Of a stretch of DNA of 64,000 nucleotides, positions 9,752-63,898 are shown in pieces. Position 1 is the first letter of the stretch; each line of letters opens with the position of its first letter. The translations under genes and the position numbers were made by a program. The stretch lies in IMG/VR virus record IMGVR_UViG_3300028920_000022, positions 1-64,000 of that record. The stretch is one strand, 5' to 3'. A model generated the notes under the pieces. That model was not told where the DNA came from, did not search any database, and saw only the letters and a list, made by a program, of their open reading frames with translations.

Positions 9752-9762
9752 AGTGTTTCCAG

Positions 9763-9955: not shown

Positions 9956-9956
9956 A

Positions 9957-45081: not shown

Positions 45082-45084
45082 TGT

Positions 45085-46405: not shown

Positions 46406-46478
46406 ACCCTTTCTAATCCTTTTCCTAACAGCTTTTCTTTTCTTAACCCGCCCCTTGCCCTAAATATATAAAACGCCT

Positions 46479-50306: not shown

Positions 50307-50735
50307 ATGTATAGAATTCCGATCTATGAATGCCAGTTGGTTCAATGTGGTGAGCAAGTTCACAGCGTGGATCGGGTGGATTGTTTCGAGCAAGCGACCC
50401 GAATCATTCACGGGATGACCAAACATTCCCCTTGTGAACGGATCATTGTGGTCTATCTGAACGGTGCCAACGGGCTCATGGGAGCGGAGCAGGTTTCTCA
50501 GGGTGGGCTGCATGGGTGTGCCATTATGCCGCGGGATGTAGTCCGTGGCGCCCTGGTGGCAAACGCTAGTGCGATCGTTATCGGACACAATCATCCTTCT
50601 GGTGATCCGACTCCCAGCGTGGAGGATATTCGGATGACCGAAGAGTTGGCGAAAGTCTGCGATATGATTGGGGTTCCGCTGCTGGACCATGTGATTGTCA
50701 CCCGGGACGGCAAGTCGCGGTCAATATTGTCTTGA
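50307..50735 (+). CDS. RadC-like JAB-domain protein
   Basis: E..., PRDV, HNHPSGDPTPSVED, LLDHVIV. Confidence 0.9.
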   Translation: MYRIPIYECQLVQCGEQVHSVDRVDCFEQATRIIHGMTKHSPCERIIVVYLNGANGLMGAEQVSQGGLHGCAIMPRDVVRGALVANASAIVIGHNHPSGDPTPSVEDIRMTEELAKVCDMIGVPLLDHVIVTRDGKSRSILS

Positions 50736-50814
50736 CATAACTTTTTGGCTGTGGTATTCTCGCGTTGCTTTCGACGCATACAGCGGCGAAGCAACGCGAG
50801 AAAGGTTGATTAGA

Positions 50815-51060
50815 ATGTTTGCAATTCACCTATGCGCGTCCAACGATCTGAACGGCAATGCTCGGCGATGTTTCCTGGTTTTCGATCGGGAGGTTCCGGT
50901 TGCCTGCGTTGACGAGGGTTGTGCTGGCAGAGGCGCCCTGAAACGAGCGGGATTCGAGGATTGTCCGGTCCAAGCCAGTTTCCAGGTTCCGCCGGCAGAA
51001 TATCGCAGCTGTCTCAAGTTTTACCCCAACCGGAAGGTTGACATTCGTTCGATAGTGTGA
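50815..51060 (+). CDS. hypothetical protein
   Basis: start MFAIHL; NDLNGNARR..VDEG motif. Confidence 0.7.
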   Translation: MFAIHLCASNDLNGNARRCFLVFDREVPVACVDEGCAGRGALKRAGFEDCPVQASFQVPPAEYRSCLKFYPNRKVDIRSIV

Positions 51061-51078
51061 GAGAATCTGGAACATATC

Positions 51079-51363
51079 ATGCCACGCGAATATTACTTTG
51101 AGGGGTTGGAACCTAGCGGCACCCTTGCAGATCACTGTTATGGCAGGCGTATCTACATACACCGAAACGGGCTGATTCCAGAGACAGTGAAAAAGGTGCT
51201 AGACTTCGTCTCAGTGTGGGGAGGGTGGGACAAGAATATTGACGGTTGGTTGGGGTGGGAATTACCCATTAACCGGGCGGAAGCAGAAAACGCTTTCTTT
51301 CTGGCACGGAAAGTATTAGAACACGAAAGGTTCCGCCGGCTATCGAATCGACCTTGGAAGTAA
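51079..51363 (+). CDS. hypothetical protein
   Basis: follows a promoter. Confidence 0.65.
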   Translation: MPREYYFEGLEPSGTLADHCYGRRIYIHRNGLIPETVKKVLDFVSVWGGWDKNIDGWLGWELPINRAEAENAFFLARKVLEHERFRRLSNRPWK

Positions 51364-51400
51364 CATTGACATTCGCCTTTTGGTGTGAGATAATCTGACC

Positions 51401-51574
51401 ATGAAGCACTATCAATCTGGTATCGAGTGGAGAACCGGTGCAGTCAACCAATTACAGCACCGCGGTAACAAGTGGTTTCTGATCACTTGTCAAAACGGGA
51501 ACACGAACGAAACTCCCGTGTCCAAGAAGATAGCGAAGTCTCTCCTGGCGGGAGGCATGAGCTACGGGTCATGA
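51401..51574 (+). CDS. 57-aa hypothetical protein (leaderless)
   Basis: ATG 6 nt after GATAAT; MKHYQSGIEW..GMSYGS. Confidence 0.6.
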   Translation: MKHYQSGIEWRTGAVNQLQHRGNKWFLITCQNGNTNETPVSKKIAKSLLAGGMSYGS

Positions 51575-51638
51575 CAGACTTTCGGCACGGGTTTTTGGTG
51601 GGGGCAACGTTAGCATTCCTACTGATGGGGATCATGTT

Positions 51639-51824
51639 GTGAAAGACTTCGGGTTAGTGGAGCTGGAGGAGAGGTTTCCGGCGGCATATGGGGCGTTGTC
51701 GGAACCGTACCGAAACGATTCCTGTTTGGTGTTTTTCGTTGACATAAACGGGAATCTATGTGCGGAGCTGGACATAGGGGGAGAATATCTCTGGACGGGG
51801 GAAAAGTGGGTTACAATCGGGTAA
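51639..51824 (+). CDS. hypothetical protein
   Basis: ORF. Confidence 0.55.
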   Translation: MKDFGLVELEERFPAAYGALSEPYRNDSCLVFFVDINGNLCAELDIGGEYLWTGEKWVTIG

Positions 51825-51844
51825 AAGCCTGATAGGGTAAAGCT

Positions 51845-52240
51845 ATGAAAAAGATTATTGACGGAATGGCTCGCGCCATGTACGTATGCTGGTGGGCGGA
51901 CCGGGAGGAAGAGAGGGGACGCAGCCACGGAGGGGAGGAGTTAACCGAGGTTGCTCCTGCAACGAACCGGCACGCCAAGGATCGAGCGTGGCTATTGTGC
52001 GGGATGTTCGAGCAACTGAACGGATTGAGCATCATGTCCCTTTTCGTGCGAGCCATGATTGCTGATGGCATCCTGCCGAGTTGGGAGTATACGGACGACC
52101 AGTTTCGGGAGGCATACGAGCGATATTCGGGGGAATTCGGGCATTACTTGGCAATGAGGGCAACCGGCACGGGGTGTGCGTGGGAGGACGATCACGCCAA
52201 GTTTGAGATTGAGTACCCGAATTACGAATATTACGCTTGA
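51845..52240 (+). CDS. hypothetical protein
   Basis: FGHYLAM...G.G..W.D motif; stop lies in TTGACA. Confidence 0.7.
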   Translation: MKKIIDGMARAMYVCWWADREEERGRSHGGEELTEVAPATNRHAKDRAWLLCGMFEQLNGLSIMSLFVRAMIADGILPSWEYTDDQFREAYERYSGEFGHYLAMRATGTGCAWEDDHAKFEIEYPNYEYYA

Positions 52241-52524
52241 CACGTGTTTCTAAACGTGCGAACATGGGTTTCATCAAAAGGAGAGAATAAGACTTATCAA
52301 GAAAAACCGCCAGGGTAGCTCCTCCGACGTTCAAGGTTTAGCTAACTTTTGGGCGACTTAAACTGGCAATCTCAGGAAAGCACCTGGGGAGCCTAGATAA
52401 AAGGACCAGAGAATAATGGTTTAGGGTTTTCTGGTGGCGGTTTTACTTGGTTAAAAAAGGGTTTTACAATGTCAGACTGGGAAAAAGGTTGACAGTCCCT
52501 CTTAATTGAGGTAAAAAGGGAACA

Positions 52525-52782
52525 ATGAACAAGCGGCAGTGGACACACTACTTCAAGGTACAGGGGCACGGACGTTTTCCCTACGATATGCTTCGGTATG
52601 ATCGGTGTTATCCGGCATACGAAGATGAATCATACAAGCTGGACACCACGGATATGCCCATAGCCAAGTATCTGGAGGATCGGGTGGTAGAATTGGTGCA
52701 TGTGGGCTCGCCGGACTGGCGCCCCATGAAAGCCCGTTGGACTTCGTTCGGCTGGCATGTGGTAGAAACCAGAAAAGCTTGA
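52525..52782 (+). CDS. conserved phage hypothetical protein
   Basis: F.V.G.G.FP.DMLRYD.C.P..RW.SFGW. Confidence 0.75.
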   Translation: MNKRQWTHYFKVQGHGRFPYDMLRYDRCYPAYEDESYKLDTTDMPIAKYLEDRVVELVHVGSPDWRPMKARWTSFGWHVVETRKA

Positions 52783-52813
52783 CAATCGGTTCTAAAAGAG
52801 GTAAAAGGGAACA

Positions 52814-53002
52814 ATGAAGCACACGGACAGAAAGAGTCGAGCGGACACAATCCCGGTTATCTGTGACAAGTGCGGAGCGGAAGCCAGAGGATTCCCGGGG
52901 ATGAGTCACCGAAGGTGTTCCGGGCAGGGAGACCAGGGACCGCGGGAAAAGCGAGCTGAGCGGCTGGCGCCCAAGAATCGAGGAGTCTGGCGAGCCGGCT
53001 GA
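52814..53002 (+). CDS. small zinc-binding protein
   Basis: CDKCG..H..C; own promoter. Confidence 0.65.
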   Translation: MKHTDRKSRADTIPVICDKCGAEARGFPGMSHRRCSGQGDQGPREKRAERLAPKNRGVWRAG

Positions 53003-53268
53003 GAGGACTAATCAACCAAAAACCGCCAAAGAGCAGAAAGAGGTTGTTTATAGGATAGAATAAGAGTAAACTCGGGGCGTGAGGGATCAAACGGGATCAA
53101 ACGGGTCTCTCACGCCTCGAATAGGGCACAGCAGAATAGTTTAGGCAGCGCGGCAACATAACCCTCACCGCCCCTGATTCCTTCTGTGCCGTATTCGGGG
53201 AGCCGCCCGAGCCCTATCGCGCCAGGGGTAATACTGGCGCTTAGATTAAACCCAGAGTAATTCTGAGG

Positions 53269-53538
53269 ATGACTACCGACAAGCAAAACGTTCTTTTTCG
53301 GAATATTCAGAAAAGACTGAATACGCTCGATGAAGCAAAACAGGATGATGACACAATCATTGTCTCGTTTTATTCGGATCAAAACCATCAAAAACTGGTT
53401 CTGACCCTATGGATTCGCAACCATACCGCCACGGTAGCCACTTCGGTTGCGGCGCCGGTTCACGGCTGGAAACAGCATGCAGCGGCTTGGCAACGGGCGG
53501 AAGAATTGGTATACTACCACAACCTAACGGATGGTTGA
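53269..53538 (+). CDS. hypothetical protein
   Basis: ORF. Confidence 0.55.
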   Translation: MTTDKQNVLFRNIQKRLNTLDEAKQDDDTIIVSFYSDQNHQKLVLTLWIRNHTATVATSVAAPVHGWKQHAAAWQRAEELVYYHNLTDG

Positions 53539-53588
53539 TTCCGGTAAAAAAGGCTTGACAATTTTTTCAATTGATGTAGGATACTGTC

Positions 53589-53813
53589 ATGAAACTTCAA
53601 GAAGTCGTGGACGCATTCACTCGCGGGGAAGTTGGTTCTGGAAACAACGTAATGTCGACTGGGGATAGGGTATATTCCTATCAGATGTTGATTGCGCAGC
53701 GGATTGATGGGAAGGTTCGCGTGGTGAATCCGAAGTGCAGTCCAAGCCGGACGACCAGCAAACACATCAATGCGGTTCTGCGGGCGTGTCCGGGTGCAGG
53801 GGTGGGCATCTGA
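53589..53813 (+). CDS. conserved phage hypothetical protein
   Basis: VYSY..LIA..S.TTSKH; own promoter. Confidence 0.7.
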   Translation: MKLQEVVDAFTRGEVGSGNNVMSTGDRVYSYQMLIAQRIDGKVRVVNPKCSPSRTTSKHINAVLRACPGAGVGI

Positions 53814-53883
53814 AGGTAAACAATGGCAATCAAGTACACAACCACAGTTGACGTTCAGTCAGCATCGATGAAAGGGTAGCAAC

Positions 53884-54120
53884 ATGGCAAAAACGAGAAA
53901 GAAGATGCCGCAAGATGCGGTCTTGTTCAAGTCTGAGAGCGTGTGCGCCGGCGGGACGATCATTGGCCCAGTATGGGTTCGGCGGAAAGGCAAGATTAGC
54001 AACTACAAGGACAGCGACCTACTGATCAGCGGGACCAAGAAGTTCTACCCGGAGTGGTTCACGCTGGGTGAGGCTCGTCGCCTCGCCAAGGTTTTGGATC
54101 TTGAATTCGAGGATGCCTGA
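53884..54120 (+). CDS. hypothetical protein
   Basis: ORF with SD. Confidence 0.6.
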   Translation: MAKTRKKMPQDAVLFKSESVCAGGTIIGPVWVRRKGKISNYKDSDLLISGTKKFYPEWFTLGEARRLAKVLDLEFEDA

Positions 54121-54184
54121 CTGGCAAGGACCGGCGAAAACGGATAATAAAGAGGTCGCTTTTACTTCGGTAGAAAAGAAGACA

Positions 54185-54367
54185 ATGAATAACACCCTAG
54201 CCCACTGTCCTACGGTTGCCCTTATCAACCGAATAAGGAACGCACCTATGGGTATGACCATGCGTGAGGTTGCGGATCAGTTGGTTGACGCTGGCGAGGA
54301 TCCTGGTACGGTTTTTCTGGCATATACTGCCGCAAAGATACTTGACAAGGACCAGGCTAAAAGGTAG
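54185..54367 (+). CDS. hypothetical protein
   Basis: start MNNTL. Confidence 0.55.
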   Translation: MNNTLAHCPTVALINRIRNAPMGMTMREVADQLVDAGEDPGTVFLAYTAAKILDKDQAKR

Positions 54368-54377
54368 AATAACACTC

Positions 54378-54584
54378 ATGAATGACGCAGAACGCGAAAA
54401 CTGGATTCTTAACGATGAAGGTCTCTATCACTGGTGGAAGTCCTCACGTCTGAGCATGCGCAGGTTTATCCGCGAAAACAGGGAAACCCTCACTTCCGCT
54501 ATCGAGGCTGCCGGTTCCGGCGGTGCTCCCGACCCACACCTGACCGAAGCTCAACGCGCTTCTGTTTGGTGTATGTCCATGTAG
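54378..54584 (+). CDS. hypothetical protein (leaderless)
   Basis: MNDAERENWILNDEGLY; TTGACA-17-TAGAAT. Confidence 0.7.
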   Translation: MNDAERENWILNDEGLYHWWKSSRLSMRRFIRENRETLTSAIEAAGSGGAPDPHLTEAQRASVWCMSM

Positions 54585-54591
54585 GTGTATA

Positions 54592-54960
54592 ATGTCTGAA
54601 TATAAAGCAACCTGTATTATTACGGGAAAAACGTTCACGGATCAAGAAGCCGAGGAACACATTGCGGAAACTTCTTTGGGTCCTGTGTGGGCGGCTCTTT
54701 GGGATTCGGATATTCAGTTCGATGAATATGGTATGGCTCTTATTCCTCGAAAGTGGAAGGAACGGTTTCGAATTCTTGAGAATGCTTCGGAAGATGCTTT
54801 TGAGAAGGAATGTCCACACGACCAGTTGATTGAATGTTATTCTCAAGAGTGGGTGTCTGGGGACTGTCTTCGATTGGATCTTCAGTGTAGCCAATGTGGG
54901 AAAAAGGGAACAATGTCAGTTCTATTGGACCCTAAAAACATTCTTTGGGAAAAAGATTGA
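54592..54960 (+). CDS. zinc-binding hypothetical protein
   Basis: CPH..CSQCG. Confidence 0.65.
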   Translation: MSEYKATCIITGKTFTDQEAEEHIAETSLGPVWAALWDSDIQFDEYGMALIPRKWKERFRILENASEDAFEKECPHDQLIECYSQEWVSGDCLRLDLQCSQCGKKGTMSVLLDPKNILWEKD

Positions 54961-54991
54961 CATTACCTAAAACCTGGAGTATAATCTTTTC

Positions 54992-55300
54992 ATGAATCTT
55001 TTCGTAGAAGAGTCGCACGTCGATGCCACCCGAGGGGTCAATTACGGCTCATCCGGCGTTCAGGAAAGTTTTACCAATAATGTTGGGCGTCTTTTCCGCT
55101 CCTGTCAGAGTCACTTCGGGCGCTGCACTTCCAGCGTCTATATCGACACCCCACAAGGGTCCAAAAAGATCGGTTGGGTTTTCGAGAAACAGGAAAAGTA
55201 CACTGACACTGGAGAGCCCTACCTGAGCGAAACGTGGGTAACAGTACACAAGTGCGCACCTGAACGTATGGTCAGATACGATTATCAGTTTTTGGATTGA
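54992..55300 (+). CDS. hypothetical protein (leaderless)
   Basis: GRCTSSVYID..IGWVFEK..ETWV. Confidence 0.75.
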   Translation: MNLFVEESHVDATRGVNYGSSGVQESFTNNVGRLFRSCQSHFGRCTSSVYIDTPQGSKKIGWVFEKQEKYTDTGEPYLSETWVTVHKCAPERMVRYDYQFLD

Positions 55301-55348
55301 CACATGGGGATCTGATAAGATATAAGGGAGCTACAAGGAAACGAAAAC

Positions 55349-55684
55349 ATGAACGAACCAGAAACCATTAGTGTAAATAATGTGGAATATGTGCGCAAAG
55401 ATGCTCAGCCGCCTCCGAACGGCAAGCGTGCTGTGGTCGTGGTTGACCGGGGTTGGATTTTTGCCGGCGATGTAGCTGAAGAAAACGGCAGAATTCGGCT
55501 CAGTCGTGCAGTGTTGGTGTTCAATTGGAGTCAGATTGGGTTTGATGGCGTGCTGAGGAATCCTAGAAGTGAGAAGGTGAACATCCGGAAGTTGTCACAC
55601 GACGTGGACTTGCCGTGTGATGCTGAGGTTTTTCGTATTCCAGTAGCTGATAACTGGGGACTGTTTTCGTATTCCAGTAGCTGA
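55349..55684 (+). CDS. Sm-like (DUF6948-like) protein
   Basis: VVVVDRGWIFAG..L..A....W; typically linked to GYG repeats. Confidence 0.6.
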   Translation: MNEPETISVNNVEYVRKDAQPPPNGKRAVVVVDRGWIFAGDVAEENGRIRLSRAVLVFNWSQIGFDGVLRNPRSEKVNIRKLSHDVDLPCDAEVFRIPVADNWGLFSYSSS

Positions 55685-55697
55685 TAACTGGGGACTG
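55630..55697. repeat. perfect 34-bp tandem duplication
   Basis: TTTTCGTATTCCAGTAGCTGATAACTGGGGACTG x2. Confidence 0.9.
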
Positions 55698-55699
55698 TG

Positions 55700-55933
55700 A
55701 TGGATGTTAATCCGATAGGTGACGGCTACGGCAGCGGCTACGGCGACGGCTACGGCAGCGGCTACGGCGACGGCTACGGCGACGGCTACGGCGACGGCTA
55801 CGGCGACGGCAGCGGCTACGGCTACGGCAACGGCAACGGCGACGGCAGCGGCTACGGCAACGGCTACGGCGACGGCGACGGCAGCGGCTACGGCTACGGT
55901 ACAATTAGACGCCGCATTAGAAGAAAACCTTGA
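55700..55933 (+). CDS. glycine-rich (GYGDG/GSG) repeat protein
   Basis: GGC-NAC tandem repeats; stop lies in TTGACA. Confidence 0.75.
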   Translation: MDVNPIGDGYGSGYGDGYGSGYGDGYGDGYGDGYGDGSGYGYGNGNGDGSGYGNGYGDGDGSGYGYGTIRRRIRRKP

Positions 55934-55964
55934 CAGCCATCTATCCTTTCTGATACACTGTATT

Positions 55965-56135
55965 CATCAAGCGGTCAGGAACCGAGGAGAATACTCTGGA
56001 ATACTGGACGAAGCAGGGACGCTTCGGGGGGATCCGTTTTATCTAGGCAACCCCAAACGGATCCCTCCGCACTCATGGTCCAACAGAGCCTCACGTTGAT
56101 CCTTCAGCCTTGGGCTTTCTCCGGCTGAACTCCCG
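55965..56135 (+). ncRNA. candidate structured non-coding RNA
   Basis: own promoter; nested stems GAGG/CCTC, CTCTG/CAGAG, TGGAC/GTCCA, CGAAGC/GCTTCG, GGATCCGTTT/AAACGGATCC. Confidence 0.55.
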
Positions 56136-56279
56136 ATTTCGTAAACGGTATCTGTTTCGTGGCTTTCCTTTCCTTGATTATGTTAAGGGTTATATCATGG
56201 GTCGGGATGGTTGTCAACCGGTTTTTTGATGGCAAGAAACTATTGACATTATCAAAAAAGTAAGATATAACCCTAGACC

Positions 56280-56531
56280 ATGAAAACAGCGATTATTGAG
56301 GTTGCTTACCTGTATGAGGACGGCACGTTTCTTACCCAGGTAATTGAGGTAAAAGCGGACCCGAAGGACAACGAAGCGGTCGAGCGAGCAAAGGACGAGT
56401 ATGCCCGTAAAAACCGAAATAAGGAGTGTGTCTGGTGTGTCACGCTTACCAACCACTTTGCGCTAGCAGAGATTCTGGAGGGGTTGAACCCTCGGGATCT
56501 GGTTGGACATAGCCGTCACGGAAACTATTGA
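56280..56531 (+). CDS. hypothetical protein
   Basis: own promoter. Confidence 0.65.
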   Translation: MKTAIIEVAYLYEDGTFLTQVIEVKADPKDNEAVERAKDEYARKNRNKECVWCVTLTNHFALAEILEGLNPRDLVGHSRHGNY

Positions 56532-56801
56532 CTTTGCCTGAAAACTAAGATATAACTCTGACTGCAAAAGCGGAGATAACATCACATGCAGATTTCGTTT
56601 GCTACTCTACACGTTTTGGCGTCGTTTTCGGTAGATGCAAAACGAACGCGGACTCGGTGGTTGGATCTAGTGGATTTGTATCCTGGGCAAGAAGTATCTT
56701 GTTTCTTTACCAATCACGAATTCAATCTTTTGGTATTCCCGGTTTTCGCGGATAAAAGGAAATAGTTGACATTATCCTAAAAACCCAATATAATCCTTCT
56801 C

Positions 56802-57950
56802 ATGTCTCAATACACAATCATGGCACACCGGCTCGACGAGCTGGAGAAACGAATCCGGCGCCTCAATAAAAAAGGTGGGAATATCGTCCTAGATGCCGGC
56901 TGTGAACGGGTCGAAGAATGGACCGACCCGGAAACCAATACCAAACATTCCCGCGTCGTGGTTGATATTGAGCTGGACGGGCTTGCCCCTGTCATTGATG
57001 GCTGGACCTTCATTGCCGCCCTGGAATGGCTGGAAACCGCCAATGTGGTCACTTCTGCCCCGGATACCCAGGTGCCCGAAAAGTACCGCCTGGCTGAGCC
57101 TATCTGCGAACATTGCGGCTGGGACCGTAAACGAATCTATACCTTCGTGCTTCGCTCGGAAACCGGGGAATATAAGCAGGTTGGCAAAACCTGCCTCCAA
57201 GACTTCCTCCGCTCCTCTGATCCCGGCTGGGCGGTCAACGTATTCAACCTCATGGGCGATCTGTCCCGGTGGGCTGAGTTGGACCGAGAAGAGTGTCTTG
57301 GGGGCGGTGGACCCCGGGGCTACAGTGCTCTGCGATTGCTGGCGGTTACTAGCAAGGTAATTCGGGAATATGGGTGGAAGGCGCGCAGCAAGGTTGTAGG
57401 CAACGAAGCAGCTACCGCTGACATTGCCTTGGCTTTTTTGGAAGATAACCCCTTTTCCGAGCTGGACCCTAAAGATCTCGAAAAGGCTACTGCGGTCCTC
57501 GATTGGGCGCCCACTATTGAACCCAAGTCGGATTATGAGCATAATCTCAAAACGGTATTAGGTGACGGACCTGACGGGCTAGTGAGGTACAAGCATGCTG
57601 GAATTGCGTGCAGCGGGATTATTGCGTACAATCGGGTACACGAGCAACCGAAGAGCAAGATTGAGTCAACCTATTTTGGTGAGATTGGAAAGCGATATCG
57701 TGGGGTTGCGGCTACGGTAAGCCGGGTGAGGTACACAGAGGGGATGTACGGGACCACGACTGTGGTATCGATGGTAACGCCGGAGGGGCAGGAATTGGTG
57801 TGGTTTGCTTCTGGAGGGGTCAAGGGGGTAGATGAGGATGAGCTGGTGGGAAAGGCGATCAAGCTGGACGGAACGGTAAAGAAGCATGATGAATTTCGGG
57901 GAGTAAAGCAAACGAAGCTGAACCGGTGTAAGATAGTGGTTGACGGGTGA
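56802..57950 (+). CDS. conserved phage protein with zinc finger and C-terminal OB-fold-like domain
   Basis: CEHCG..R..QVGKTC; G.IGKR..LVWFAS..GTVKKH.EF.G.KQT.L.R. Confidence 0.75.
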   Translation: MSQYTIMAHRLDELEKRIRRLNKKGGNIVLDAGCERVEEWTDPETNTKHSRVVVDIELDGLAPVIDGWTFIAALEWLETANVVTSAPDTQVPEKYRLAEPICEHCGWDRKRIYTFVLRSETGEYKQVGKTCLQDFLRSSDPGWAVNVFNLMGDLSRWAELDREECLGGGGPRGYSALRLLAVTSKVIREYGWKARSKVVGNEAATADIALAFLEDNPFSELDPKDLEKATAVLDWAPTIEPKSDYEHNLKTVLGDGPDGLVRYKHAGIACSGIIAYNRVHEQPKSKIESTYFGEIGKRYRGVAATVSRVRYTEGMYGTTTVVSMVTPEGQELVWFASGGVKGVDEDELVGKAIKLDGTVKKHDEFRGVKQTKLNRCKIVVDG

Positions 57951-58362
57951 GGTAAAGGTTGATATAAAGGATCTGTATCGCACGGGAGTAAAACATGGCA
58001 AAGCTAGTTGTATATTGCGGTAATGACGAAATTATTGTCACCACCAAGAAAAACGAAGCCCGAATGTTGGCGGAATATTTCCATGCCAAAACCGGTCGAA
58101 AGGTGGAGGACTACGATCGGAATGTCAAAATGACAATCCGTATTGCTAGTGAGGTAGTCGTCTCTGGTGATTAGAGGTGAGACGCTACTCCAAAGATCCT
58201 CATTGGTGGGTTGAGGTAAAGTTTAGTATAGGACGTTAGTGGGATGTGTATATTCAGTAAATGTAATTGGCAAGAGATTGCGCGCACATACGCGCCGCCG
58301 CTTAAAGTTGCGTTTGAGATTAAGGGTCCTTCTTACGCGGATGCGGCTGATAAGGTAATAGC

Positions 58363-58578
58363 ATGAATTGGGAATGCAGACTTTACGGAAAGATCAACAT
58401 TCAATCCGGAGCAATCCGCCGAGTAGACCGCAAGTTTGACGGGTCAGGGGACGTATATGCTGCTGCGTTGAGAGAGCTGAGCAAGCGGAAGGACCAAGGG
58501 GAACCGTGGTATGGGGATGCTGTCACGGTGATCACGCCACTAGGGCAGAAGCTCATTGTGGAAGTACCTTACCCTTGA
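58363..58578 (+). CDS. hypothetical protein
   Basis: SD; stop lies in TTGACA. Confidence 0.6.
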   Translation: MNWECRLYGKINIQSGAIRRVDRKFDGSGDVYAAALRELSKRKDQGEPWYGDAVTVITPLGQKLIVEVPYP

Positions 58579-58869
58579 CAGGTAGAATCAAGGGAAAAGA
58601 AACATATTGACATTGTTCCCTAAATACTGTAAGATCTTATCTTCAAATCGAAAACCAAGTTAAGTACCCGCTCGGAATGGTTCCGGGGCGGAACGAAGGT
58701 TAACACATATGAATCTAAAGCGATCGAGGTATCCTCCGCTTTCTTAACTTTTCGCTTGATAAAACTGTTGAATTTAATATGTTGATTGACTAAGTCCCCG
58801 TCCTGTTTGATAGAAGATTTCGCCGTCCTCTTGAAACACAGGGCGGGGCAACTTTTAGCGAAGGAAACC

Positions 58870-59121
58870 ATGACAGACAAGAAAAAGGGAATTTGGATTA
58901 TTGAGCGCCGGGATGGGGTTGAATATCTGGCGTGCGAGGTAGAATTCGCGCAAGGAATTGTTTATGTTCGCAAGCCGGTAAGAGCGAACGGCACTCACTG
59001 GGAAAAACTTTGTACTTCGGCGCTATACTTTCCCATTGACATGCTTGCGTCGTGGGGATGGACCGACGACAAAAATTATATTAAACAATATAATATTGCC
59101 GGCGCTTTTGCAGAAGAATAG
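58870..59121 (+). CDS. hypothetical protein
   Basis: AAGGA SD, MTDKKK. Confidence 0.6.
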   Translation: MTDKKKGIWIIERRDGVEYLACEVEFAQGIVYVRKPVRANGTHWEKLCTSALYFPIDMLASWGWTDDKNYIKQYNIAGAFAEE

Positions 59122-59176
59122 GGCAATCTGAGGCGCAATCATTCGCAGCTGCCGTCTGGGATGAGGAAAACAACCG

Positions 59177-59362
59177 ATGTCTCTAAAAACCGTCATAAAA
59201 GAAGAAAAGGATCTAATAAGCCTCACTATTGAAGGGATGAGCAAGGATCAGTTTCTGACGTTGTTTTATGCTCTTGAGAACCACGAAACTATGGATGGTC
59301 AAGACTTGTACGCCCGTATACGTTCAGCCATGCCGCAGGAATTGAGGGTTAAAATCTGGTAA
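59177..59362 (+). CDS. hypothetical protein
   Basis: GAGGA SD. Confidence 0.6.
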   Translation: MSLKTVIKEEKDLISLTIEGMSKDQFLTLFYALENHETMDGQDLYARIRSAMPQELRVKIW

Positions 59363-59403
59363 AAGAGATTGACAACCTGTTTTAAGTTTGGTATAAGGGT
59401 GAC

Positions 59404-59679
59404 ATGACAAAGCAAGAAATTATCACGGAGTTGGCGGGTGGACGTTGGAGTCACGAAGACATTCAGGATTTTGCCAGTGCTCTGAAGGGTTGTCGAGCAG
59501 CGGCTGATGCTGTTGCTAAGTGGCAATTTAATGTCGGGGATAAGGTCAAGTTTACGGGACGTCGGGGCAACGTAGTGGTTGGCACGGTAGTCAAGCGAAT
59601 GACCAAGAACCTGCAAGTTCGGGAGGATGAAAAGTTTCGTACCTGGACCGTTCCGCCGAGCATGTTGGAAAAGGTTTGA
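59404..59679 (+). CDS. KOW/SH3-like barrel protein
   Basis: FNVGDKVKF..G.V.K..K..WTVPPSML. Confidence 0.7.
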   Translation: MTKQEIITELAGGRWSHEDIQDFASALKGCRAAADAVAKWQFNVGDKVKFTGRRGNVVVGTVVKRMTKNLQVREDEKFRTWTVPPSMLEKV

Positions 59680-59710
59680 CAATTTGGGTAAAGTCTAGTA
59701 TAAAGATTTT

Positions 59711-60001
59711 ATGATTCACTTTAACGAACCTGGCGATCTCACGGAGTGGGCATTAGGGATATACCAGCAATTACGCTGGCAGCCCTGGGAGCCATTCGAT
59801 TCCGGCTCTAGGTTTCGTTGTATTGAGATTCCGATGCCCGCGACACAGAAAGCGTGGGAGGATCTGGAAACTAAGGTATTGACAGAATTACACTCTGACT
59901 GTTTTCTTGCACCTTCGGGGGAAAGCAGAGAAAAGGCGTTAATTGTCGAGATGGAGAATATTGTGGGATTTAGGACAATTCCATATCCGGGGCAACCTTG
60001 A
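59711..60001 (+). CDS. hypothetical protein (leaderless)
   Basis: own promoter. Confidence 0.65.
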   Translation: MIHFNEPGDLTEWALGIYQQLRWQPWEPFDSGSRFRCIEIPMPATQKAWEDLETKVLTELHSDCFLAPSGESREKALIVEMENIVGFRTIPYPGQP

Positions 60002-60032
60002 CAAGCGGATTTAATTAGAAAAAGGTTGACAA

Positions 60033-60383
60033 ATGCGAGTTTTAGGGCTAGACTTCACGGAACTTAAAACACATATTAACCAATCGGTTACGTCCGATCT
60101 AGCAAAAGGGGACCAAGTTTTCGAATATAAGGTTGGAGGGGCATCTTTGCTACTATTCCACCGGGCTGAAGATTGTCCTGAATATTCGGGGATGTGGTAC
60201 GTTTTATGGACTTTAGACTCCTGCGTGACGCAACTTCGAGGTTTTCCGGTGCCATTCGCTACACCGGAGGAGGCTCTTAATTTTCAAAAAGACTTAATTT
60301 TCGGGGAGCTTAAAACCAAGAAAAAGCAGATTATTGCTATTGAAAAACTATTAGCTCCTTTTGAGGATAAAGTTTTTAATTGA
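60033..60383 (+). CDS. hypothetical protein
   Basis: stop lies in TTGACA. Confidence 0.6.
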   Translation: MRVLGLDFTELKTHINQSVTSDLAKGDQVFEYKVGGASLLLFHRAEDCPEYSGMWYVLWTLDSCVTQLRGFPVPFATPEEALNFQKDLIFGELKTKKKQIIAIEKLLAPFEDKVFN

Positions 60384-60414
60384 CAGATTTTTTTAGTTAA
60401 GGTATAAGGGGACC

Positions 60415-60846
60415 ATGAATTACCGAGACGAAGCCGTTTACGACGCAAAGACGCTGGTCAAAGAGCAGCTAGCTGAACCCATTTTGGAACAGCTCGGACC
60501 GAATGGAAACCTAATGCGGGTTTTTGATCACGATTCGGTGTATACCTGGGTTCACGAATATTGTATTGATAAGTCGTACACGCTATTGGAAGCGGCAACG
60601 TTGCTTGACCAATTGCGAGATTATACCGAAACTGACTATGGACTTTGGCATTGTCTTGAGCCTAAAGATGCCATCGCCGTCCAGGCGGCATATACTTACG
60701 GGAATGCGGTGCAAAGTCTTGCCAGGAGTTTGGTGGAGAATATTGGGGAAGAATACGACACGCTAGAGCAGGGGGACGACGAGGCTGACGAAGCGTGGGA
60801 TGAGCGGGCACGAAAGCATATTGTCGAGTATATTGAGAACTTGTAG
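60415..60846 (+). CDS. acidic helical protein (possible Ocr-like DNA mimic)
   Basis: D/E-rich; leaderless early gene. Confidence 0.5.
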   Translation: MNYRDEAVYDAKTLVKEQLAEPILEQLGPNGNLMRVFDHDSVYTWVHEYCIDKSYTLLEAATLLDQLRDYTETDYGLWHCLEPKDAIAVQAAYTYGNAVQSLARSLVENIGEEYDTLEQGDDEADEAWDERARKHIVEYIENL

Positions 60847-60850
60847 GATC

Positions 60851-61219
60851 ATGACAGTAATTGATTTCAAAAAGGCACGAACCAGACAGCTAAAAGGCAA
60901 GAGTGTGGATGCCAATGGTATGTTCGTACCAGTACGAAAGGCTAAGGAAACCACAGAAGCAGATTGTTTCGTTTATCTAAACGGTGGCGACGGGGTGGTG
61001 CTATTACCGATAAGTGAAAGTTTGGATAATCTAAAACGATGTCTTGCAAAGTTTGATTTTAGCGACGACATGGAGATTGTGGAAATCGATGATATGCAAG
61101 GGTTTATGGAGATGGTACCTAAAGAGCTGGACGGAAAGCCAGTAAAGATAATTCTCAATCCTTTTCCAGTAGTGGGGGCAGAGAAGGTTGTATGTGGGAT
61201 GTTGTTAGATAAGGTTTGA
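60851..61219 (+). CDS. hypothetical protein
   Basis: start MTVIDF. Confidence 0.65.
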   Translation: MTVIDFKKARTRQLKGKSVDANGMFVPVRKAKETTEADCFVYLNGGDGVVLLPISESLDNLKRCLAKFDFSDDMEIVEIDDMQGFMEMVPKELDGKPVKIILNPFPVVGAEKVVCGMLLDKV

Positions 61220-61250
61220 CAACGGCTTATAATTGGGGTATAAAGAGACC

Positions 61251-61556
61251 ATGAATGACAAGGAATTTGAGGTTGGGTATGACGACTCCAATTGTTGGGG
61301 AGTTTTCGGTGTAGACTCAGGGCACTGTTATTCGCTTTATTCGGACAAGGGAGAAGCTGAGCTGGACGCGGTAAAGCGAGAGATTAACCGACTGGAGACT
61401 ATTGACAGCGGCTCGGATGAAATTCTCCGAACCATTCACAACGAATGGGTGGACACCTTGAGGGCTACGGAGGGGGACGCGGATGTTTCAGTATTGAAAC
61501 GACATATTCGGTTCGTTAAGAAGCTTTCGGAGGCAATTGAGATTCTCAAAGGATAG
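61251..61556 (+). CDS. hypothetical protein (leaderless)
   Basis: start MNDKEF 6 nt after TATAAA. Confidence 0.65.
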   Translation: MNDKEFEVGYDDSNCWGVFGVDSGHCYSLYSDKGEAELDAVKREINRLETIDSGSDEILRTIHNEWVDTLRATEGDADVSVLKRHIRFVKKLSEAIEILKG

Positions 61557-61558
61557 CT

Positions 61559-61888
61559 ATGCTTAAGTACATCAATGGACGTTGGCAGAGATTGCCTGAC
61601 AAAATGCCTGAGCCGAATATCGATTACATGAGTTTCGATCTTGACGAACTAATTGGGGCGGTTTATAATTGGTGTCATAATAGTGCCGAGGGGCTACGTT
61701 TTGACGCTGGGAATCTGATCCATCGCGTAGATCCTGGTGAAAAAGATTATTTACTTTCGGCAGCGAAAGATTGTGACACTGTAAAGGCAAAGATGGCAGA
61801 GGCTCTTGAAGTGATGTTTCCGGGGCTTCTACAGGAATTCTGGGAAGCACAAGAGGAAATCAAAATCAACCGATGCATGGCATTGTAA
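61559..61888 (+). CDS. hypothetical protein
   Basis: ORF in operon. Confidence 0.6.
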   Translation: MLKYINGRWQRLPDKMPEPNIDYMSFDLDELIGAVYNWCHNSAEGLRFDAGNLIHRVDPGEKDYLLSAAKDCDTVKAKMAEALEVMFPGLLQEFWEAQEEIKINRCMAL

Positions 61889-61902
61889 AGAGGAGAATAA
61901 AA

Positions 61903-62070
61903 ATGGACCTTGAGGAAGACACGAAGAATGAATGTTTGCGCCGATTGAGAGCATTATTGTCAGAATATAGGCATCAATCAAGGGAAAACGAACTCAACGG
62001 ATTGCAACATACTGCGGCGGTAAAAGCGGGCAGGCTGGAATCTATTATTGTTGCATTAGAGCAGCTTTAA
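61903..62070 (+). CDS. hypothetical protein
   Basis: GAGGAG SD, MDLEED. Confidence 0.6.
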   Translation: MDLEEDTKNECLRRLRALLSEYRHQSRENELNGLQHTAAVKAGRLESIIVALEQL

Positions 62071-62287
62071 GGCGATAACATAGAGAGACGCCTGGGAGAG
62101 ATTCCGTCGGGGAGATCATGTCTTCTCATTGAGGACACAAAAAGTGCGGCAGATTGCTTGACTTACCGTGGAGAGTTTGGTATTGCTAAGTTCAAGTTGT
62201 ATCAGGATCTAGCGATGCTGGAGGGTTTCCAGCACGCCAGGCGAACACCGGGGCTTAAAAACCTCCCCTTTCTTCATAAGTTAGTTG

Positions 62288-62572
62288 ATGAATGATCTAA
62301 AGCAGAAATTATGGTTACGGCGCCAAGCCATTCTTGCCGAATGTCCCAGGGAGGTTGCTCGGGAACAGAATACGGAGGAAATGGTTGCGTTGGACCGTGA
62401 AGCAATTTCACACTGCGTGGATGATCGTATTGCTCGCGGGTGGGCGCCGGAGGATGTTTTGGCTTATGCTATCAATCTGGAGCATGTAAACCCTGTACTT
62501 GAGGAAGACGTGGCACTCAAGAGAATGGCAGAAGTTTCTAAAAAGTATCCTCCGATTAAGAAGAGGGGTTGA
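62288..62572 (+). CDS. hypothetical protein
   Basis: stop lies in TTGACT. Confidence 0.6.
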   Translation: MNDLKQKLWLRRQAILAECPREVAREQNTEEMVALDREAISHCVDDRIARGWAPEDVLAYAINLEHVNPVLEEDVALKRMAEVSKKYPPIKKRG

Positions 62573-62607
62573 CTTTCATATTAAGGCTTGATATAAGGAA
62601 ATTAGAT

Positions 62608-63075
62608 ATGTACTACAAACCAATCAACCGTAAATCTAGCGCCATTAGTGCATTGCTGGACGAATCCCCGGTATATCAAAAGCAAGGGGAGGTCAATGCT
62701 CGTCCTGCGAATACTGGAGAGGCAATCACTACTGAACTAAAGAGTGGTACTACGGAAACTACCAATACTGCAAAGCCCGGAGATTGGATCGTCACTAATC
62801 CGAGTGGAGAGCAGTACATTATTTCCGGGGAAAAGTTTTTCAATCGTTACCAACCGACCAGTAAAACTGGAGTTTACGCTGCCAAGGGGTTCTGCCGAGC
62901 AGTTCAGAATCCTTTTGGGGAACCGATTCAGATCATGGCATCTTGGGGTGAGGTGCAGGTAGGTGACGAACACTGTTTTATTGCGGACGTTTGCAACGCA
63001 GCCGGGGTAAGAGACGGAGAGCCGTACCTTATTGATGCTGATGCTTTTAGAGATACGTATCAAAAAGCGCATTGA
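62608..63075 (+). CDS. PGDYG-domain-like protein
   Basis: AKPGDWIV.NP.GEQY.I..EKF...Y; duplicated half domain. Confidence 0.7.
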   Translation: MYYKPINRKSSAISALLDESPVYQKQGEVNARPANTGEAITTELKSGTTETTNTAKPGDWIVTNPSGEQYIISGEKFFNRYQPTSKTGVYAAKGFCRAVQNPFGEPIQIMASWGEVQVGDEHCFIADVCNAAGVRDGEPYLIDADAFRDTYQKAH

Positions 63076-63106
63076 CAATTAGACTTTAATCGGCTATAAT
63101 TGCTTT

Positions 63107-63541
63107 ATGGAAATCGCAGAAAGTGATAAACCGCTATTCGATGCTTTACCTAAGCTAGTACAGCGAACACAGGAGCTATTGAAGGCAGCCGGGCTTACCT
63201 GTAAGATTAGTGTCAATGATGATGCCTGGTCGGATCCTTCGATTGAACTGGATACTACTGGTATTGGTGTTTGTATTTCGTGGGATTCCGATAAGGTTAC
63301 ATATGGCGCTTTTACTACGGTTTACAATCCGGGAGTGATGTACTACCCAGATGGTAGTGGGGAACCGCCGAGCGAGGATTACAGCGAACTGGGGAAAGCC
63401 AGCACGAATCCTAACGGTCCTCTCACTGAGGCAATCAAGGCATTGATTGAGTTTCGGCTTAATGATCTGTTTGAGCACGAAGCGGACGAAGAGGAAGCCA
63501 AGTATTGGGCGGAAATGGAAAGAGTGGATTTTAATCCTTGA
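63107..63541 (+). CDS. acidic hypothetical protein (leaderless)
   Basis: consensus promoter; YYPDGSGEPP motif. Confidence 0.7.
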   Translation: MEIAESDKPLFDALPKLVQRTQELLKAAGLTCKISVNDDAWSDPSIELDTTGIGVCISWDSDKVTYGAFTTVYNPGVMYYPDGSGEPPSEDYSELGKASTNPNGPLTEAIKALIEFRLNDLFEHEADEEEAKYWAEMERVDFNP

Positions 63542-63574
63542 CAATAGTCCTTATTCCGATCTATAAGGTTGGTC

Positions 63575-63814
63575 ATGACAATTATTCTAGCAAATGGTCC
63601 CAAGGTTCCGGCACACGGCACAACGGCAGCGTGGCGGAGTGTATTGGTTCAAGAGCCTACTGAGCTGGTGGTTTATGCCGAGTATTTCAATGATACTGGA
63701 TCATACTACAGTCACGGGGTGTACTTCGACAGTGCACAATGGAAGGAAGCAAAGCGGCACTTTACGCAAGCGGTATGTCGGGACCTGAGACGAATTGATG
63801 AGATTAGGGGTTGA
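63575..63814 (+). CDS. hypothetical protein
   Basis: Y.HG.YF motif; own promoter. Confidence 0.6.
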   Translation: MTIILANGPKVPAHGTTAAWRSVLVQEPTELVVYAEYFNDTGSYYSHGVYFDSAQWKEAKRHFTQAVCRDLRRIDEIRG

Positions 63815-63898
63815 CAAAAGGTTTAGATAGGGGTAGTATTCTCAACATCAAGTGACGGAAGTCACAGAAAGACACAACAAACAGGAGATTATCGAATT

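What the first reader, a model, noticed from the sequence alone, without database searches (positions are those of the whole stretch)
50732..63839. Stop-codon-in-promoter cassette architecture (TGA inside TTGACA)
Seen: the TGA stop of the upstream gene forms bases 2-4 of a -35-like hexamer for about 16 genes (ending 50735, 52240, 52782, 54960, 55300, 55933, 56531, 58578, 59679, 60001, 60383, 61219, 62572, 63075, 63541, 63814). At 54367 the TAG is part of the -10 box. Inference: genes are exchanged as promoter-bounded cassettes, with the promoter supplying the stop. This is the transcription-level analogue of the left-arm junction trick.
Basis: partly seen in the sequence, partly recalled or inferred. 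Interest (0 to 1): 0.65.

Follow-up and report, generated by a model that had tools for sequence, protein, structure and literature searches.

The report
Early promoters that end upstream genes
In the early-gene region of a 459-kb phage, about 35 near-consensus bacterial promoters fill the gaps between small genes; the upstream gene usually stops on the TGA inside the -35 box and the next gene starts where transcription should start, and a related phage has the same layout with its genes in a different order.

Summary
All 16 listed TGAs lie inside TTGAC[AT]. Fifteen of them end called genes (55933 is ambiguous) and 13 have a credible -10. The TAG at 54367 opens a TAGAAT -10 box.

The window is the start of a 458,729-bp phage contig. 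From 49.8 to about 83 kb, a 50%-GC early region carries about 35 sigma-70-type promoters on the + strand. Of 27 ORFs that run into a promoter, 21 stop on the -35 TGA (binomial P = 3e-6 against 1/3). Promoter-like sites elsewhere in the genome do so in 8 of 85 cases.

In 24 promoters the ATG lies 6-8 nt after the -10, which implies leaderless mRNAs. Ten junctions have exactly 31 nt from stop to start.

A related phage found in other metagenomes has the same architecture. It shares 12 early genes with this one, in scrambled order, which fits movement of single genes. However, three recent structural variants in that phage's population do not break at promoters.

The closest known analogue is the PeSL cassette of T4-type phages, but this array has no stem-loop and its spacing leaves no room for a 5' leader. 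Cassette exchange is plausible but unproven. No transcription start site (TSS) data could be obtained.

The parts
49600..64000 (+). In-window part of the early-gene array. It holds about 40 small + strand genes at 50% GC and about 25 sigma-70-type promoters, and continues to about 83 kb in the genome.
   Evidence: GC profile; gene calls; promoter table.
50047..50075 (+). TTGACA-17-CATAAA. The TGA at 50048-50050 ends gene 49877-50050.
50732..50760 (+). Promoter TTGACA-17-TATTCT (10/12). The TGA ends the RadC-like gene 50307-50735. The next gene starts 54 nt after the -10, beyond a hairpin.
51038..51066 (+). Promoter TTGACA-17-GAGAAT. The upstream ORF 50815-51060 reads through the -35 and stops on a TGA directly 5' of the -10.
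51366..51403 (+). Promoter (11/12) with the ATG 6 nt after the -10. The upstream TAA (51361-51363) lies 2 nt before the -35, so the -35 TGA is an in-frame second stop.
52237..52265 (+). TTGACA whose TGA ends gene 51845-52240. The -10 is weak (GAACAT), so promoter status is doubtful.
52489..52527 (+). Leaderless-type promoter (TAAAAA; ATG 7 nt after the -10). No gene overlaps it.
52779..52816 (+). Promoter. The -35 TGA ends gene 52525-52782 and the ATG lies 6 nt after the -10. The stop-to-start gap is 31 nt.
53555..53591 (+). Leaderless-type promoter (spacer 16, TAGGAT). The upstream gene ends 16 nt before the -35.
54342..54380 (+). Promoter TTGACA-17-TAGAAT (11/12). The TAG of the -10 ends gene 54113-54367 and the ATG lies 7 nt after the -10.
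54957..54994 (+). Perfect 12/12 promoter. The -35 TGA ends gene 54592-54960, the ATG lies 6 nt after the -10, and the gap is 31 nt.
55297..55326 (+). Promoter (spacer 18, TATAAG). The -35 TGA ends gene 54992-55300. The downstream gene has a 22-nt leader.
55930..55959 (+). TTGACA-18-TACACT. The TGA ends the Gly-Tyr-repeat frame 55697-55933, but gene callers prefer the overlapping frame 55719-56099, so this site is ambiguous.
56243..56282 (+). Leaderless-type promoter (TATAAC, ATG 8 nt after the -10) in a 180-nt gap.
56528..56556 (+). Promoter TTGACT-17-TATAAC. The TGA ends gene 56280-56531. The downstream gene has a 29-nt leader.
56766..56804 (+). Perfect 12/12 promoter. The upstream TAG abuts the -35. 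The ATG at 56802, 7 nt after the -10, starts the 382-aa gene.
58575..58635 (+). Two TTGACA hexamers 32 nt apart. The first supplies the stop of gene 58363-58578 but has a poor -10. The second has TAAGAT.
59369..59406 (+). Leaderless-type promoter (11/12). The upstream TAA lies 6 nt before the -35. Its spacer matches that of the orthologous promoter in phage B (19 of 33 non-hexamer positions).
59676..59713 (+). Promoter (11/12). The -35 TGA ends gene 59404-59679, the ATG lies 6 nt after the -10, and the gap is 31 nt.
59998..60035 (+). TTGACA whose TGA ends gene 59711-60001. The 31-nt spacing is kept but the -10 is degenerate (AAAGGT).
60380..60417 (+). Promoter TTGACA-17-TATAAG-GGGACC-ATG. The -35 TGA ends gene 60033-60383 and the gap is 31 nt.
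61216..61253 (+). Promoter (11/12). The -35 TGA ends gene 60851-61219 and the gap is 31 nt.
62569..62610 (+). Promoter TTGACT-17-TATAAG. The TGA ends gene 62288-62572 and the ATG lies 10 nt after the -10.
63072..63109 (+). Perfect 12/12 promoter. The -35 TGA ends the PGDYG-domain gene 62608-63075 and the gap is 31 nt.
63538..63577 (+). Promoter (spacer 18). The -35 TGA ends gene 63107-63541 and the ATG lies 7 nt after the -10.
63811..63839 (+). Promoter TTGACA-17-TAGTAT. The TGA ends gene 63575-63814. The downstream gene 63899 has a 59-nt leader. The promoter and leader are conserved upstream of the orthologue in phage B.

Best explanation
This is the host-RNA-polymerase-dependent early-gene array of a 459-kb phage. 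Nearly every small ORFan has its own near-consensus housekeeping-sigma promoter: A-rich upstream tract, TTGACA, 17 +/- 1 bp, TATAAN, and often a GGGACC-like discriminator.

The array is packed so tightly that the core promoter is the whole intergenic spacer. The upstream ORF runs into the promoter and terminates on the TGA that TTGACA unavoidably contains. Less often it stops on a TGA just 5' of the -10, or on the TAG of a TAGAAT -10. The downstream ORF starts with an ATG 6-8 nt after the -10, at the predicted +1, so its own transcript would be leaderless.

The strong excess of the TGA frame most likely reflects selection for the shortest workable junction. In the other two frames the ORF needs an extra stop in the spacer. 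Otherwise, with the usual spacing, it either fuses in frame to the next gene or overlaps it.

Shown: the sequence anatomy, the statistics, and conservation of the architecture in a related phage. Inferred: promoter activity, early timing, the TSS at the ATG, and packing as the driving force.
For: - Consensus and spacing: 39 promoter-like sites against 19 +/- 4 in shuffles, nearly all on the + strand. Alignment of 34 promoters.
- The promoter-plus-ATG pattern (TTGACN, 16-18 nt, a -10-like hexamer, 5-9 nt, then ATG or GTG opening an ORF of at least 35 codons) has 36 matches genome-wide, and 25 of them lie at 51-83 kb on the + strand.
- In 24 promoters the ATG lies 6-8 nt after the -10. Ten junctions have exactly 31 nt from stop to start and five more have 32-35 nt.
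- Frame test 21 of 27, P = 2.9e-6. Region against rest of genome, P = 7e-9. A related 473-kb phage serves as negative control.
- Non-promoter junctions in the same region are mostly short: 32 of about 62 are -23 to +7 nt, which fits strong packing.
- The alternative in-promoter stops exist (offsets 9, 11, 17, 23, 23, 26) but are rarer.
- Intrinsic-terminator-like sites are not enriched: 9 against 15 +/- 4 expected.
- No RNA polymerase beta-type Pfam hit in the genome, which fits dependence on the host enzyme.
- The same architecture occurs in phage B, including a promoter lying wholly inside an ORF that ends on an ATGA overlap.
Against: - No transcript data.
- The last -10 position, normally a conserved T, is variable here (TATAAG, TATAAA, TATAAC).
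- Shine-Dalgarno (SD) complementarity upstream of the leaderless-type genes is no weaker than for the other genes (mean -4.4 against -4.8 kcal/mol, P = 0.54). Translation from read-through transcripts through weak SD-like AAGG or GAGG motifs is therefore not excluded.
- Packing alone does not explain why even shorter junctions (ORF ending in the spacer; gaps of 10-27 nt) are the minority.
- It also does not explain the spacer subfamilies or the scrambled gene order in the relative.
Confidence: 0.6

Rival explanations
1. The promoters act as linker sequences for recombination. Single genes move between and within phage genomes as promoter-bounded cassettes. The promoter supplies the stop of whatever ORF lands upstream of it and a leaderless start for whatever lands downstream.
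For: - Only one weak paralogue pair among 98 early proteins, although the promoters resemble each other.
- Promoter spacers have subfamily structure beyond the column consensus: 35 pairs with at least 16 of 33 matches against 15.9 expected (P < 0.001). Similarity falls with distance (rho = -0.20).
- Phage B shares 12 early genes at 39-86% identity in scrambled order, mostly as single genes.
- Orthologues g59404 and g76082 end on a TTGACA TGA in both phages although different genes follow. The g76082 tails diverge 3-8 codons before the TGA.
- Homologues of one early gene in unrelated phages sit in ordinary overlapping operons without such promoters.
- PeSL-mediated shuffling has been demonstrated in T4-type phages (PMC2839356; PMC4122927).
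Against: - All three recent structural variants in the phage B population break away from promoters.
- The extra 138-aa gene in phage B sits between a promoter and the next gene, with no second promoter.
- Only 2 of 4 orthologous promoter pairs are more alike than random pairs.
- The conserved parts of each promoter are short (two hexamers plus a few bases), which gives little homology for recombination.
- Promoters do not carry stops in all three frames more often than their AT-rich composition predicts: 18 of 35 against 12.5 expected (P = 0.04), and 10 of 23 against 8.9 expected (P = 0.40).
Confidence: 0.3
2. The repeated motif is not a host promoter. It could be recognised by a phage-encoded sigma factor or polymerase. 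Alternatively it could be chiefly a translation signal (UAAGG-like SD) or a regulatory operator, so the TGA overlap would have nothing to do with host -35 recognition.
For: - The -10 lacks the usual conserved final T.
- The TATAAGG core resembles part of an SD sequence.
- There is a weak sigma-70 region-2-like match below the Pfam cut-off at 351.4 kb.
- The spacer has a semi-conserved TAATTG-like element that could be an operator.
Against: - Perfect TTGACA at a fixed 17 +/- 1 bp from TATAA is the hallmark of housekeeping-sigma promoters. Three sites match 12 of 12.
- A UAAGG lying 5 nt before the ATG is too close for normal SD function (inference from established SD spacing rules).
- No RNA polymerase beta-type Pfam hit.
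Confidence: 0.07
3. Chance or composition. TTGACA is simply common here, and any in-frame TGA is a stop by definition.
For: Any TGA in the coding frame must be a stop, so some overlap is expected wherever promoters abut genes.
Against: - Fisher P = 7e-18 and 7e-9, and binomial P = 2.9e-6.
- The pattern is confined to one strand and one 34-kb region.
- It is absent from a related 473-kb phage and present in phage B.
Confidence: 0.02

Closest known systems
PeSL (promoter-early stem-loop) cassettes in the hyperplastic regions of T4-type phages (Arbiol et al. 2010, PMC2839356; Comeau et al. 2014, PMC4122927)
   Same: Repeated sigma-70-consensus early promoters sit between small ORFans in a plastic region. 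The element starts at the stop codon of the upstream gene and ends at the start codon of the downstream gene. Gene content and order differ between related phages.
   Different: - PeSLs place the upstream stop in an AT-rich tract before the -35. Here it is inside the -35.
- PeSLs contain a stem-loop terminator or attenuator. None is found here (mean z = -0.07).
- PeSLs end with a Shine-Dalgarno sequence. Here the ATG sits at the predicted +1.
- PeSL homology spans about 100 bp. Here only about 45 bp is loosely conserved.
- Mini-circles and promoter-located crossovers are demonstrated for PeSLs and are untested here.
Morons (promoter-gene-terminator units in lambdoid phages), as discussed in PMC2839356
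   Same: Single genes carry their own promoter within a phage genome.
   Different: There is no terminator component here. The units are contiguous and fill a whole 34-kb region rather than being isolated insertions.
Leaderless mRNAs (lambda cI from PRM; common in Actinobacteria and Deinococcus; from my own knowledge, plus Shell et al. 2015 as listed in the references of PMC8244752)
   Same: The -10 element lies 6-7 nt upstream of an ATG start codon, so the transcript begins at the start codon.
   Different: Here it is a serial feature of about 24 neighbouring genes in a huge phage. Differential RNA-seq of the jumbo phage phiKZ found no leaderless transcript (PMC8244752). It is unverified here.
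Overlapping stop/start junctions (ATGA, TAATG) in compact phage operons
   Same: One nucleotide string serves two signals so that no base is spent on spacers. The left arm of this phage and its non-promoter junctions use them.
   Different: Here the overlap is between a translational stop and a transcriptional element, not between two translational signals.
An 86.5-kb phage contig (IMGVR_UViG_3300027754_000067 = Ga0209596_1000076; loci L016 and L089)
   Same: It carries at least 12 copies of a TTGAC[AT]-17-TAAGGT/TAGGAT-type promoter with an ATG 6-7 nt after the -10, in front of small genes.
   Different: Its spacer is highly conserved (aatccagcaagatagga). The upstream genes mostly stop on a TAA in the conserved tract just before the -35, not on the -35 TGA. 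No genes are shared with this phage.

Membership tests
Housekeeping (sigma-70-type) bacterial promoter | -35 hexamer close to TTGACA | tested here: met
   27 of the 34 aligned promoters have exact TTGACA and the other 7 have TTGACT, TTGACG or TTGACC.
Housekeeping (sigma-70-type) bacterial promoter | Spacer of 17 +/- 1 bp between the hexamers | tested here: met
   26 promoters have 17 bp, 7 have 18 bp and 1 has 16 bp.
Housekeeping (sigma-70-type) bacterial promoter | -10 hexamer TATAAT with conserved A at position 2 and T at position 6 | tested here: inconclusive
   TATAA is strongly conserved, but position 6 varies (T, G, A, C).
Housekeeping (sigma-70-type) bacterial promoter | Transcription initiates about 7 nt downstream of the -10 | not testable with these tools
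PeSL cassette (T4-type phages) | Sigma-70-like early promoter repeated between ORFans in a plastic region | tested here: met
PeSL cassette (T4-type phages) | Stable stem-loop (terminator or attenuator) within or next to the promoter | tested here: not met
   Folding of 35 promoter regions gave a mean z of -0.07, and only 2 had z below -2. Terminator-like sites are not enriched.
PeSL cassette (T4-type phages) | Shine-Dalgarno sequence and start codon at the 3' end of the element | tested here: not met
   In 24 promoters the ATG lies 6-8 nt after the -10, which leaves no room for a leader.
PeSL cassette (T4-type phages) | Indels and replacements between close relatives are flanked by the element, with crossovers inside it | tested here: inconclusive
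   Gene order is scrambled between G000 and phage B. The three recent variants within phage B break away from promoters, and one gene indel abuts a promoter on one side only.
Leaderless mRNA genes | TSS at, or within a few nt of, the start codon | not testable with these tools
   Only the spacing is known: the -10 to ATG distance is 6 nt in 15 promoters, 7 nt in 7 and 8 nt in 2.
Leaderless mRNA genes | AUG start codon | tested here: met
   25 of 26 leaderless-type genes start with ATG and one with GTG.
Leaderless mRNA genes | No functional Shine-Dalgarno sequence | tested here: inconclusive
   Anti-SD pairing energy does not differ from the other early genes. SD-like AAGG or GAGG motifs occur at unusual spacings.
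Moron | Own promoter plus own terminator flanking a single gene | tested here: not met
   Promoters are present but terminators are not.

The most novel reading that the evidence does not exclude
A lineage of huge phages builds its early region from universal single-gene modules. A roughly 45-bp full-consensus promoter serves at once as the translational stop for any upstream ORF (TGA in the -35, a TGA 5' of the -10, a back-up TAA in the -10) and as a leaderless transcription-and-translation start for any downstream ORF. It may also be the preferred recombination joint. If so, ORFs could be swapped with no translation signals of their own: a stem-loop-free, SD-free counterpart of T4 PeSLs.
Probability: 0.25. 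Interest if true: 0.7.

Novelty: new variant of a known kind. Interest (0 to 1): 0.5.

Why it matters
Arrays of host-type early promoters in front of small ORFans are known from T4, T5 and their relatives. What is unusual here is a serial design, conserved in a lineage, in which the 31-nt intergenic spacer is nothing but core promoter. The stop codon lies in the -35 and the start codon at +1.

If the leaderless starts are confirmed, this would be the first huge phage known to express most of its takeover genes from leaderless mRNAs. That bears on how such phages engage host ribosomes in the first minutes of infection.

The scrambled single-gene order between two relatives makes this lineage a tractable natural system. 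It could show whether promoters serve as recombination linkers outside the T4 group. It also gives an annotation rule for such genomes: gene ends and starts can be read off the promoter.

Tried and rejected
- Megablast of 50-64 kb against cultured phage records found no match.
- Close relatives of three early proteins in IMG/VR: none for two of them, and at most 34-36% identity for the 382-aa protein.
- A DnaE-based search found relatives at 57-67% identity, including a complete 473-kb phage. That phage has neither the promoter pattern nor the 382-aa early gene. It was used as a negative control.
- A promoter-pattern scan of 185,579 prokaryote genomes gave 8 single hits in unrelated phyla, which is chance level, so there is no host clue.
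- The idea that an A-rich UP-like tract forces Lys-rich C-terminal tails was rejected: 9 of 23 against 23 of 75 (P = 0.46).
- The idea that promoters carry stops in all three frames beyond what composition predicts has only weak support (P = 0.04 and 0.40).
- The idea that leaderless-type genes lack SD complementarity compared with the other genes is not supported.
- The idea that promoters always travel with their downstream gene is mixed: 2 of 4 orthologous pairs.
- Tandem gene duplication as the source of the repeated junction was rejected, because only one weak paralogue pair exists.

Full report
CONTEXT
The window is bases 1-64,000 of a 458,729-bp virus record that CheckV rates 100% complete. 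It is JGI contig Ga0272441_10000008, and the same phage appears in two other assemblies. Bases 1-49 kb are about 37% GC and carry small - strand genes and 8 tRNA genes. At about 49.6 kb the coding strand switches to + and GC jumps to about 50%. GC then declines to the genome average by about 80-85 kb. No cultured phage is close. The genome has a DnaE-type polymerase, no detectable RNA polymerase beta-type domain and only a sub-threshold sigma-like match.

OBSERVATION
Every one of the 16 listed coordinates is a TGA at bases 2-4 of TTGACA or TTGACT. A self-trained codon-usage gene caller and the public gene calls agree that 15 of them end genes.

The site at 55933 lies in a (GGCTACGGCGAC)n repeat in which two frames are open. 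The Gly-Tyr-Gly-Asp frame ends on that TGA, but both callers chose the other frame.

Thirteen hexamers have a -10 at 17-18 bp giving at least 10 of 12 matches. Those at 52240, 58578 and 60001 do not. The TAG at 54367 is indeed the start of a TAGAAT -10 box. One more case lies in the window (50050), and seven more lie beyond it, up to 82.5 kb.

STATISTICS
- Among + strand ATG-ORFs of at least 50 aa at 50-83 kb that end in TGA, 24 of 50 have the TTGAC[AT] context. Among the other TGAs in the region, 22 of 612 have the TTGACA context (Fisher P = 7e-18).
- Among promoter-like sites (TTGAC[AT] plus a -10 matching at least 4 of 6), 23 of 38 in the early region use the -35 TGA to close a frame of at least 50 codons. 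Elsewhere in the genome, on both strands, the figure is 8 of 85 (P = 7e-9).
- In a related complete 473-kb phage the figures are 2 of 43 and 4 of 44.
- The fairest null asks which frame an ORF is in when it reads into a promoter. Twenty-one of 27 are in the TGA frame, against an expected one third (P = 2.9e-6).
- Excluding promoter-embedded stops, stop usage in the region is TAA 34, TGA 21, TAG 20. The TGA excess therefore comes from the promoters.

ANATOMY
The alignment of 34 promoters gives an A-rich tract, TTGACA, a spacer with a loose TAATTG-like element and GG, TATAA-N, a G-rich discriminator (modal GGGACC) and ATG. From established knowledge, a GGGA discriminator and an upstream A-tract are features of maximal-strength sigma-70 promoters (Haugen et al. 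2006; cited from memory).

That is the predicted +1, so these genes would be expressed from leaderless mRNAs. Genome-wide, 25 of 36 matches to a loose promoter-plus-ATG pattern fall at 51-83 kb on the + strand.

Where both overlaps occur, the stop-to-start distance is exactly 31 nt (10 junctions) or 32-35 nt (5 junctions). With a 17-bp spacer, the TAA of TATAAN is in frame with the -35 TGA. Fifteen of 24 such genes have a second in-frame stop within 10 codons. That may matter because UGA followed by C is reported to be a weak termination context in E. coli (Poole et al. 1995; from memory).

With this spacing the downstream ATG is in the frame one base 3' of the TGA frame. An upstream ORF in that frame would fuse to the next gene unless the spacer holds a stop, and 30 of 35 promoters do have one there. 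Other solutions occur:
- a TGA directly 5' of the -10 (51038, 71159);
- the TAG of the -10 (54342);
- stops early in the spacer (73081, 78125);
- stops 0-16 nt before the -35 (51366, 56766, 59369, 53555).

There are no stem-loops in or around the promoters, and terminator-like sites are not enriched. Transcripts probably read through into downstream genes. SD-like complementarity does not distinguish the gene classes.

COMPARATIVE EVIDENCE
IMG/VR holds no close relative of the early genes. Relatives found through DnaE (57-67% identity) lack the architecture.

A scan of JGI metagenome contigs for the extended promoter pattern returned 36 contigs. Several, from samples Ga0307375-79, encode homologues of G000 early genes. 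Exact-protein look-ups added overlapping contigs, including the start of a 163-kb contig. Identical overlaps of 1.7 and 2.2 kb allowed a 17,086-bp composite of this 'phage B'.

Phage B is also 50% GC here. It has about 23 TTGACA-17-TATAAA promoters, most with the ATG 6-7 nt downstream. Nine or ten of them have the -35 TGA as the upstream stop. Several phage B genes instead stop on the TGA formed by an extended -10 TG followed by A. One promoter lies wholly inside an ORF that ends on an ATGA overlap.

Twelve early genes are shared (39-86% identity). In phage B order, their G000 positions are 73.1, 59.4, 76.1, 76.7, 77.0, 77.1, 79.3, 63.9, 53.6, 64.5, 69.5 and 79.7 kb. That is one four-gene block, with single genes otherwise scattered. 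Orthologues g59404 and g76082 end on a TTGACA TGA in both phages although different genes follow them. The g76082 proteins align up to 3-8 residues before the stop and then differ (KLA against RTNSKNKG).

An independent 86.5-kb phage contig (L016/L089) carries a tightly conserved leaderless-type promoter repeated at least 12 times. There the upstream stop is a TAA just before the -35. A 50-kb contig (L080) has seven such promoters. The leaderless promoter layout is therefore not unique to this lineage, but placing the stop in the -35 is not universal.

EVIDENCE AGAINST STRICT PROMOTER-BOUNDED EXCHANGE
Within the phage B population there are three structural variants.
- An upstream-region swap whose breakpoint lies 49 nt 5' of a -35. 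It produces two different genes that share the last 16 codons.
- Presence or absence of a 92-aa GIY-YIG-like gene.
- A 78-nt in-frame indel.
None of them breaks in a promoter. A 138-aa gene present in phage B but absent here lies between the promoter and the g76702 orthologue, with no second promoter. Promoter similarity between orthologues is high for two pairs and average for two.

INTERPRETATION
The most economical reading is an early, host-polymerase-read array under strong pressure for compactness. Non-promoter junctions are mostly short: 32 of about 62 are -23 to +7 nt. In such an array the TGA intrinsic to TTGACA is the cheapest stop and the TSS is the cheapest start.

The cassette-exchange model remains a live rival at about 0.3. 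It is supported by three results: the promoter subfamilies whose similarity falls with distance, the lack of paralogy, and the scrambled single-gene order in the relative. The two models are not exclusive.

COMPARISON WITH KNOWN SYSTEMS
The closest known system is the PeSL of T4-type phages (PMC2839356, PMC4122927). This array fails two defining PeSL features, the stem-loop and the SD. I therefore class it as a new variant of that kind of regulatory cassette, not a member. Differential RNA-seq of phiKZ found no leaderless transcripts (PMC8244752). A text search found no paper linking leaderless expression with huge phages.

LIMITS
There are no transcript data. The host is unknown. Gene calls for very small ORFs are approximate. 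Phage B is a composite of metagenome contigs. The Spearman test treats promoter pairs as independent.

Noticed in passing
window 49,000-64,000, continuing to about 85 kb in G000; also G000 325-340 kb and 365-375 kb: There are sharp compositional compartments. The early array is about 50% GC against about 38% for most of the genome. A 31-33% GC patch lies at 325-340 kb and a 47-50% patch at 365-375 kb. The related 473-kb phage G001 has a roughly 170-kb block at 50-56% GC, and the phage B early region is also 50% GC. One possibility is that early genes match host codon usage before the phage tRNAs are expressed.
   Followed up: partly
window 55,699-55,935: A 12-nt tandem repeat (GGCTACGGCGAC, about 19 units) is open in two frames. 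One frame encodes a Gly-Tyr-Gly-Asp/Ser repeat peptide with a basic tail that ends on a -35 TGA. The other encodes poly(Ala-Thr) and is the frame chosen by the gene callers.
   Followed up: partly
window 55,630-55,697: A perfect 34-bp tandem duplication contains a terminator-like hairpin followed by a T-run, at the end of gene 55349-55684.
   Followed up: no
window 50,761-50,800 and about 56,030-56,064: Strong inverted repeats lie downstream of two promoters that have no ORF directly after them (50732 and 55930). They could be small RNAs or attenuators.
   Followed up: no
window 3,609-10,034: Eight tRNA genes (Glu, Trp, Leu, Pro, Asn, Phe, Asp, Gln) lie on the - strand in the AT-rich left arm.
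   Followed up: no
window about 44,600-48,200 (- strand): A run of 65-96-aa genes is joined by 4-nt overlaps in the public gene calls. GC skew changes sign at about 48 kb, where the two arms diverge.
   Followed up: no
L114:1702-1980 (phage B): A 92-aa GIY-YIG-like gene with a C-terminal Cys motif is present in some phage B contigs and absent from others, so it is probably a mobile homing-endonuclease-type insertion. Its stop is the TGA of a TTGACA that overlaps the next gene's ATG, and that hexamer is not a promoter.
   Followed up: partly
L118:1927-1946 (phage B): This looks like a collapsed promoter. TTGACAACGG is followed directly by GGTATAAG and then a GTG start. It resembles the G000 promoter at 61216 with about 11 nt of spacer deleted. 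The TGA still ends the upstream gene.
   Followed up: no
L016 / L089 (IMGVR_UViG_3300027754_000067, 86.5 kb): An unrelated phage contig carries at least 12 copies of a nearly identical roughly 45-bp leaderless-type promoter (TTGAC[AT], aatccagcaagatagga, TAAGGT, aagaac, ATG). Its -10, TAAGGT, could also act as an SD.
   Followed up: partly
G000 351,458-351,589: A weak sigma-70 region-2-like match (20 bits, below the Pfam cut-off) lies in a 223-aa ORF. It may be a phage sigma factor for later genes.
   Followed up: no
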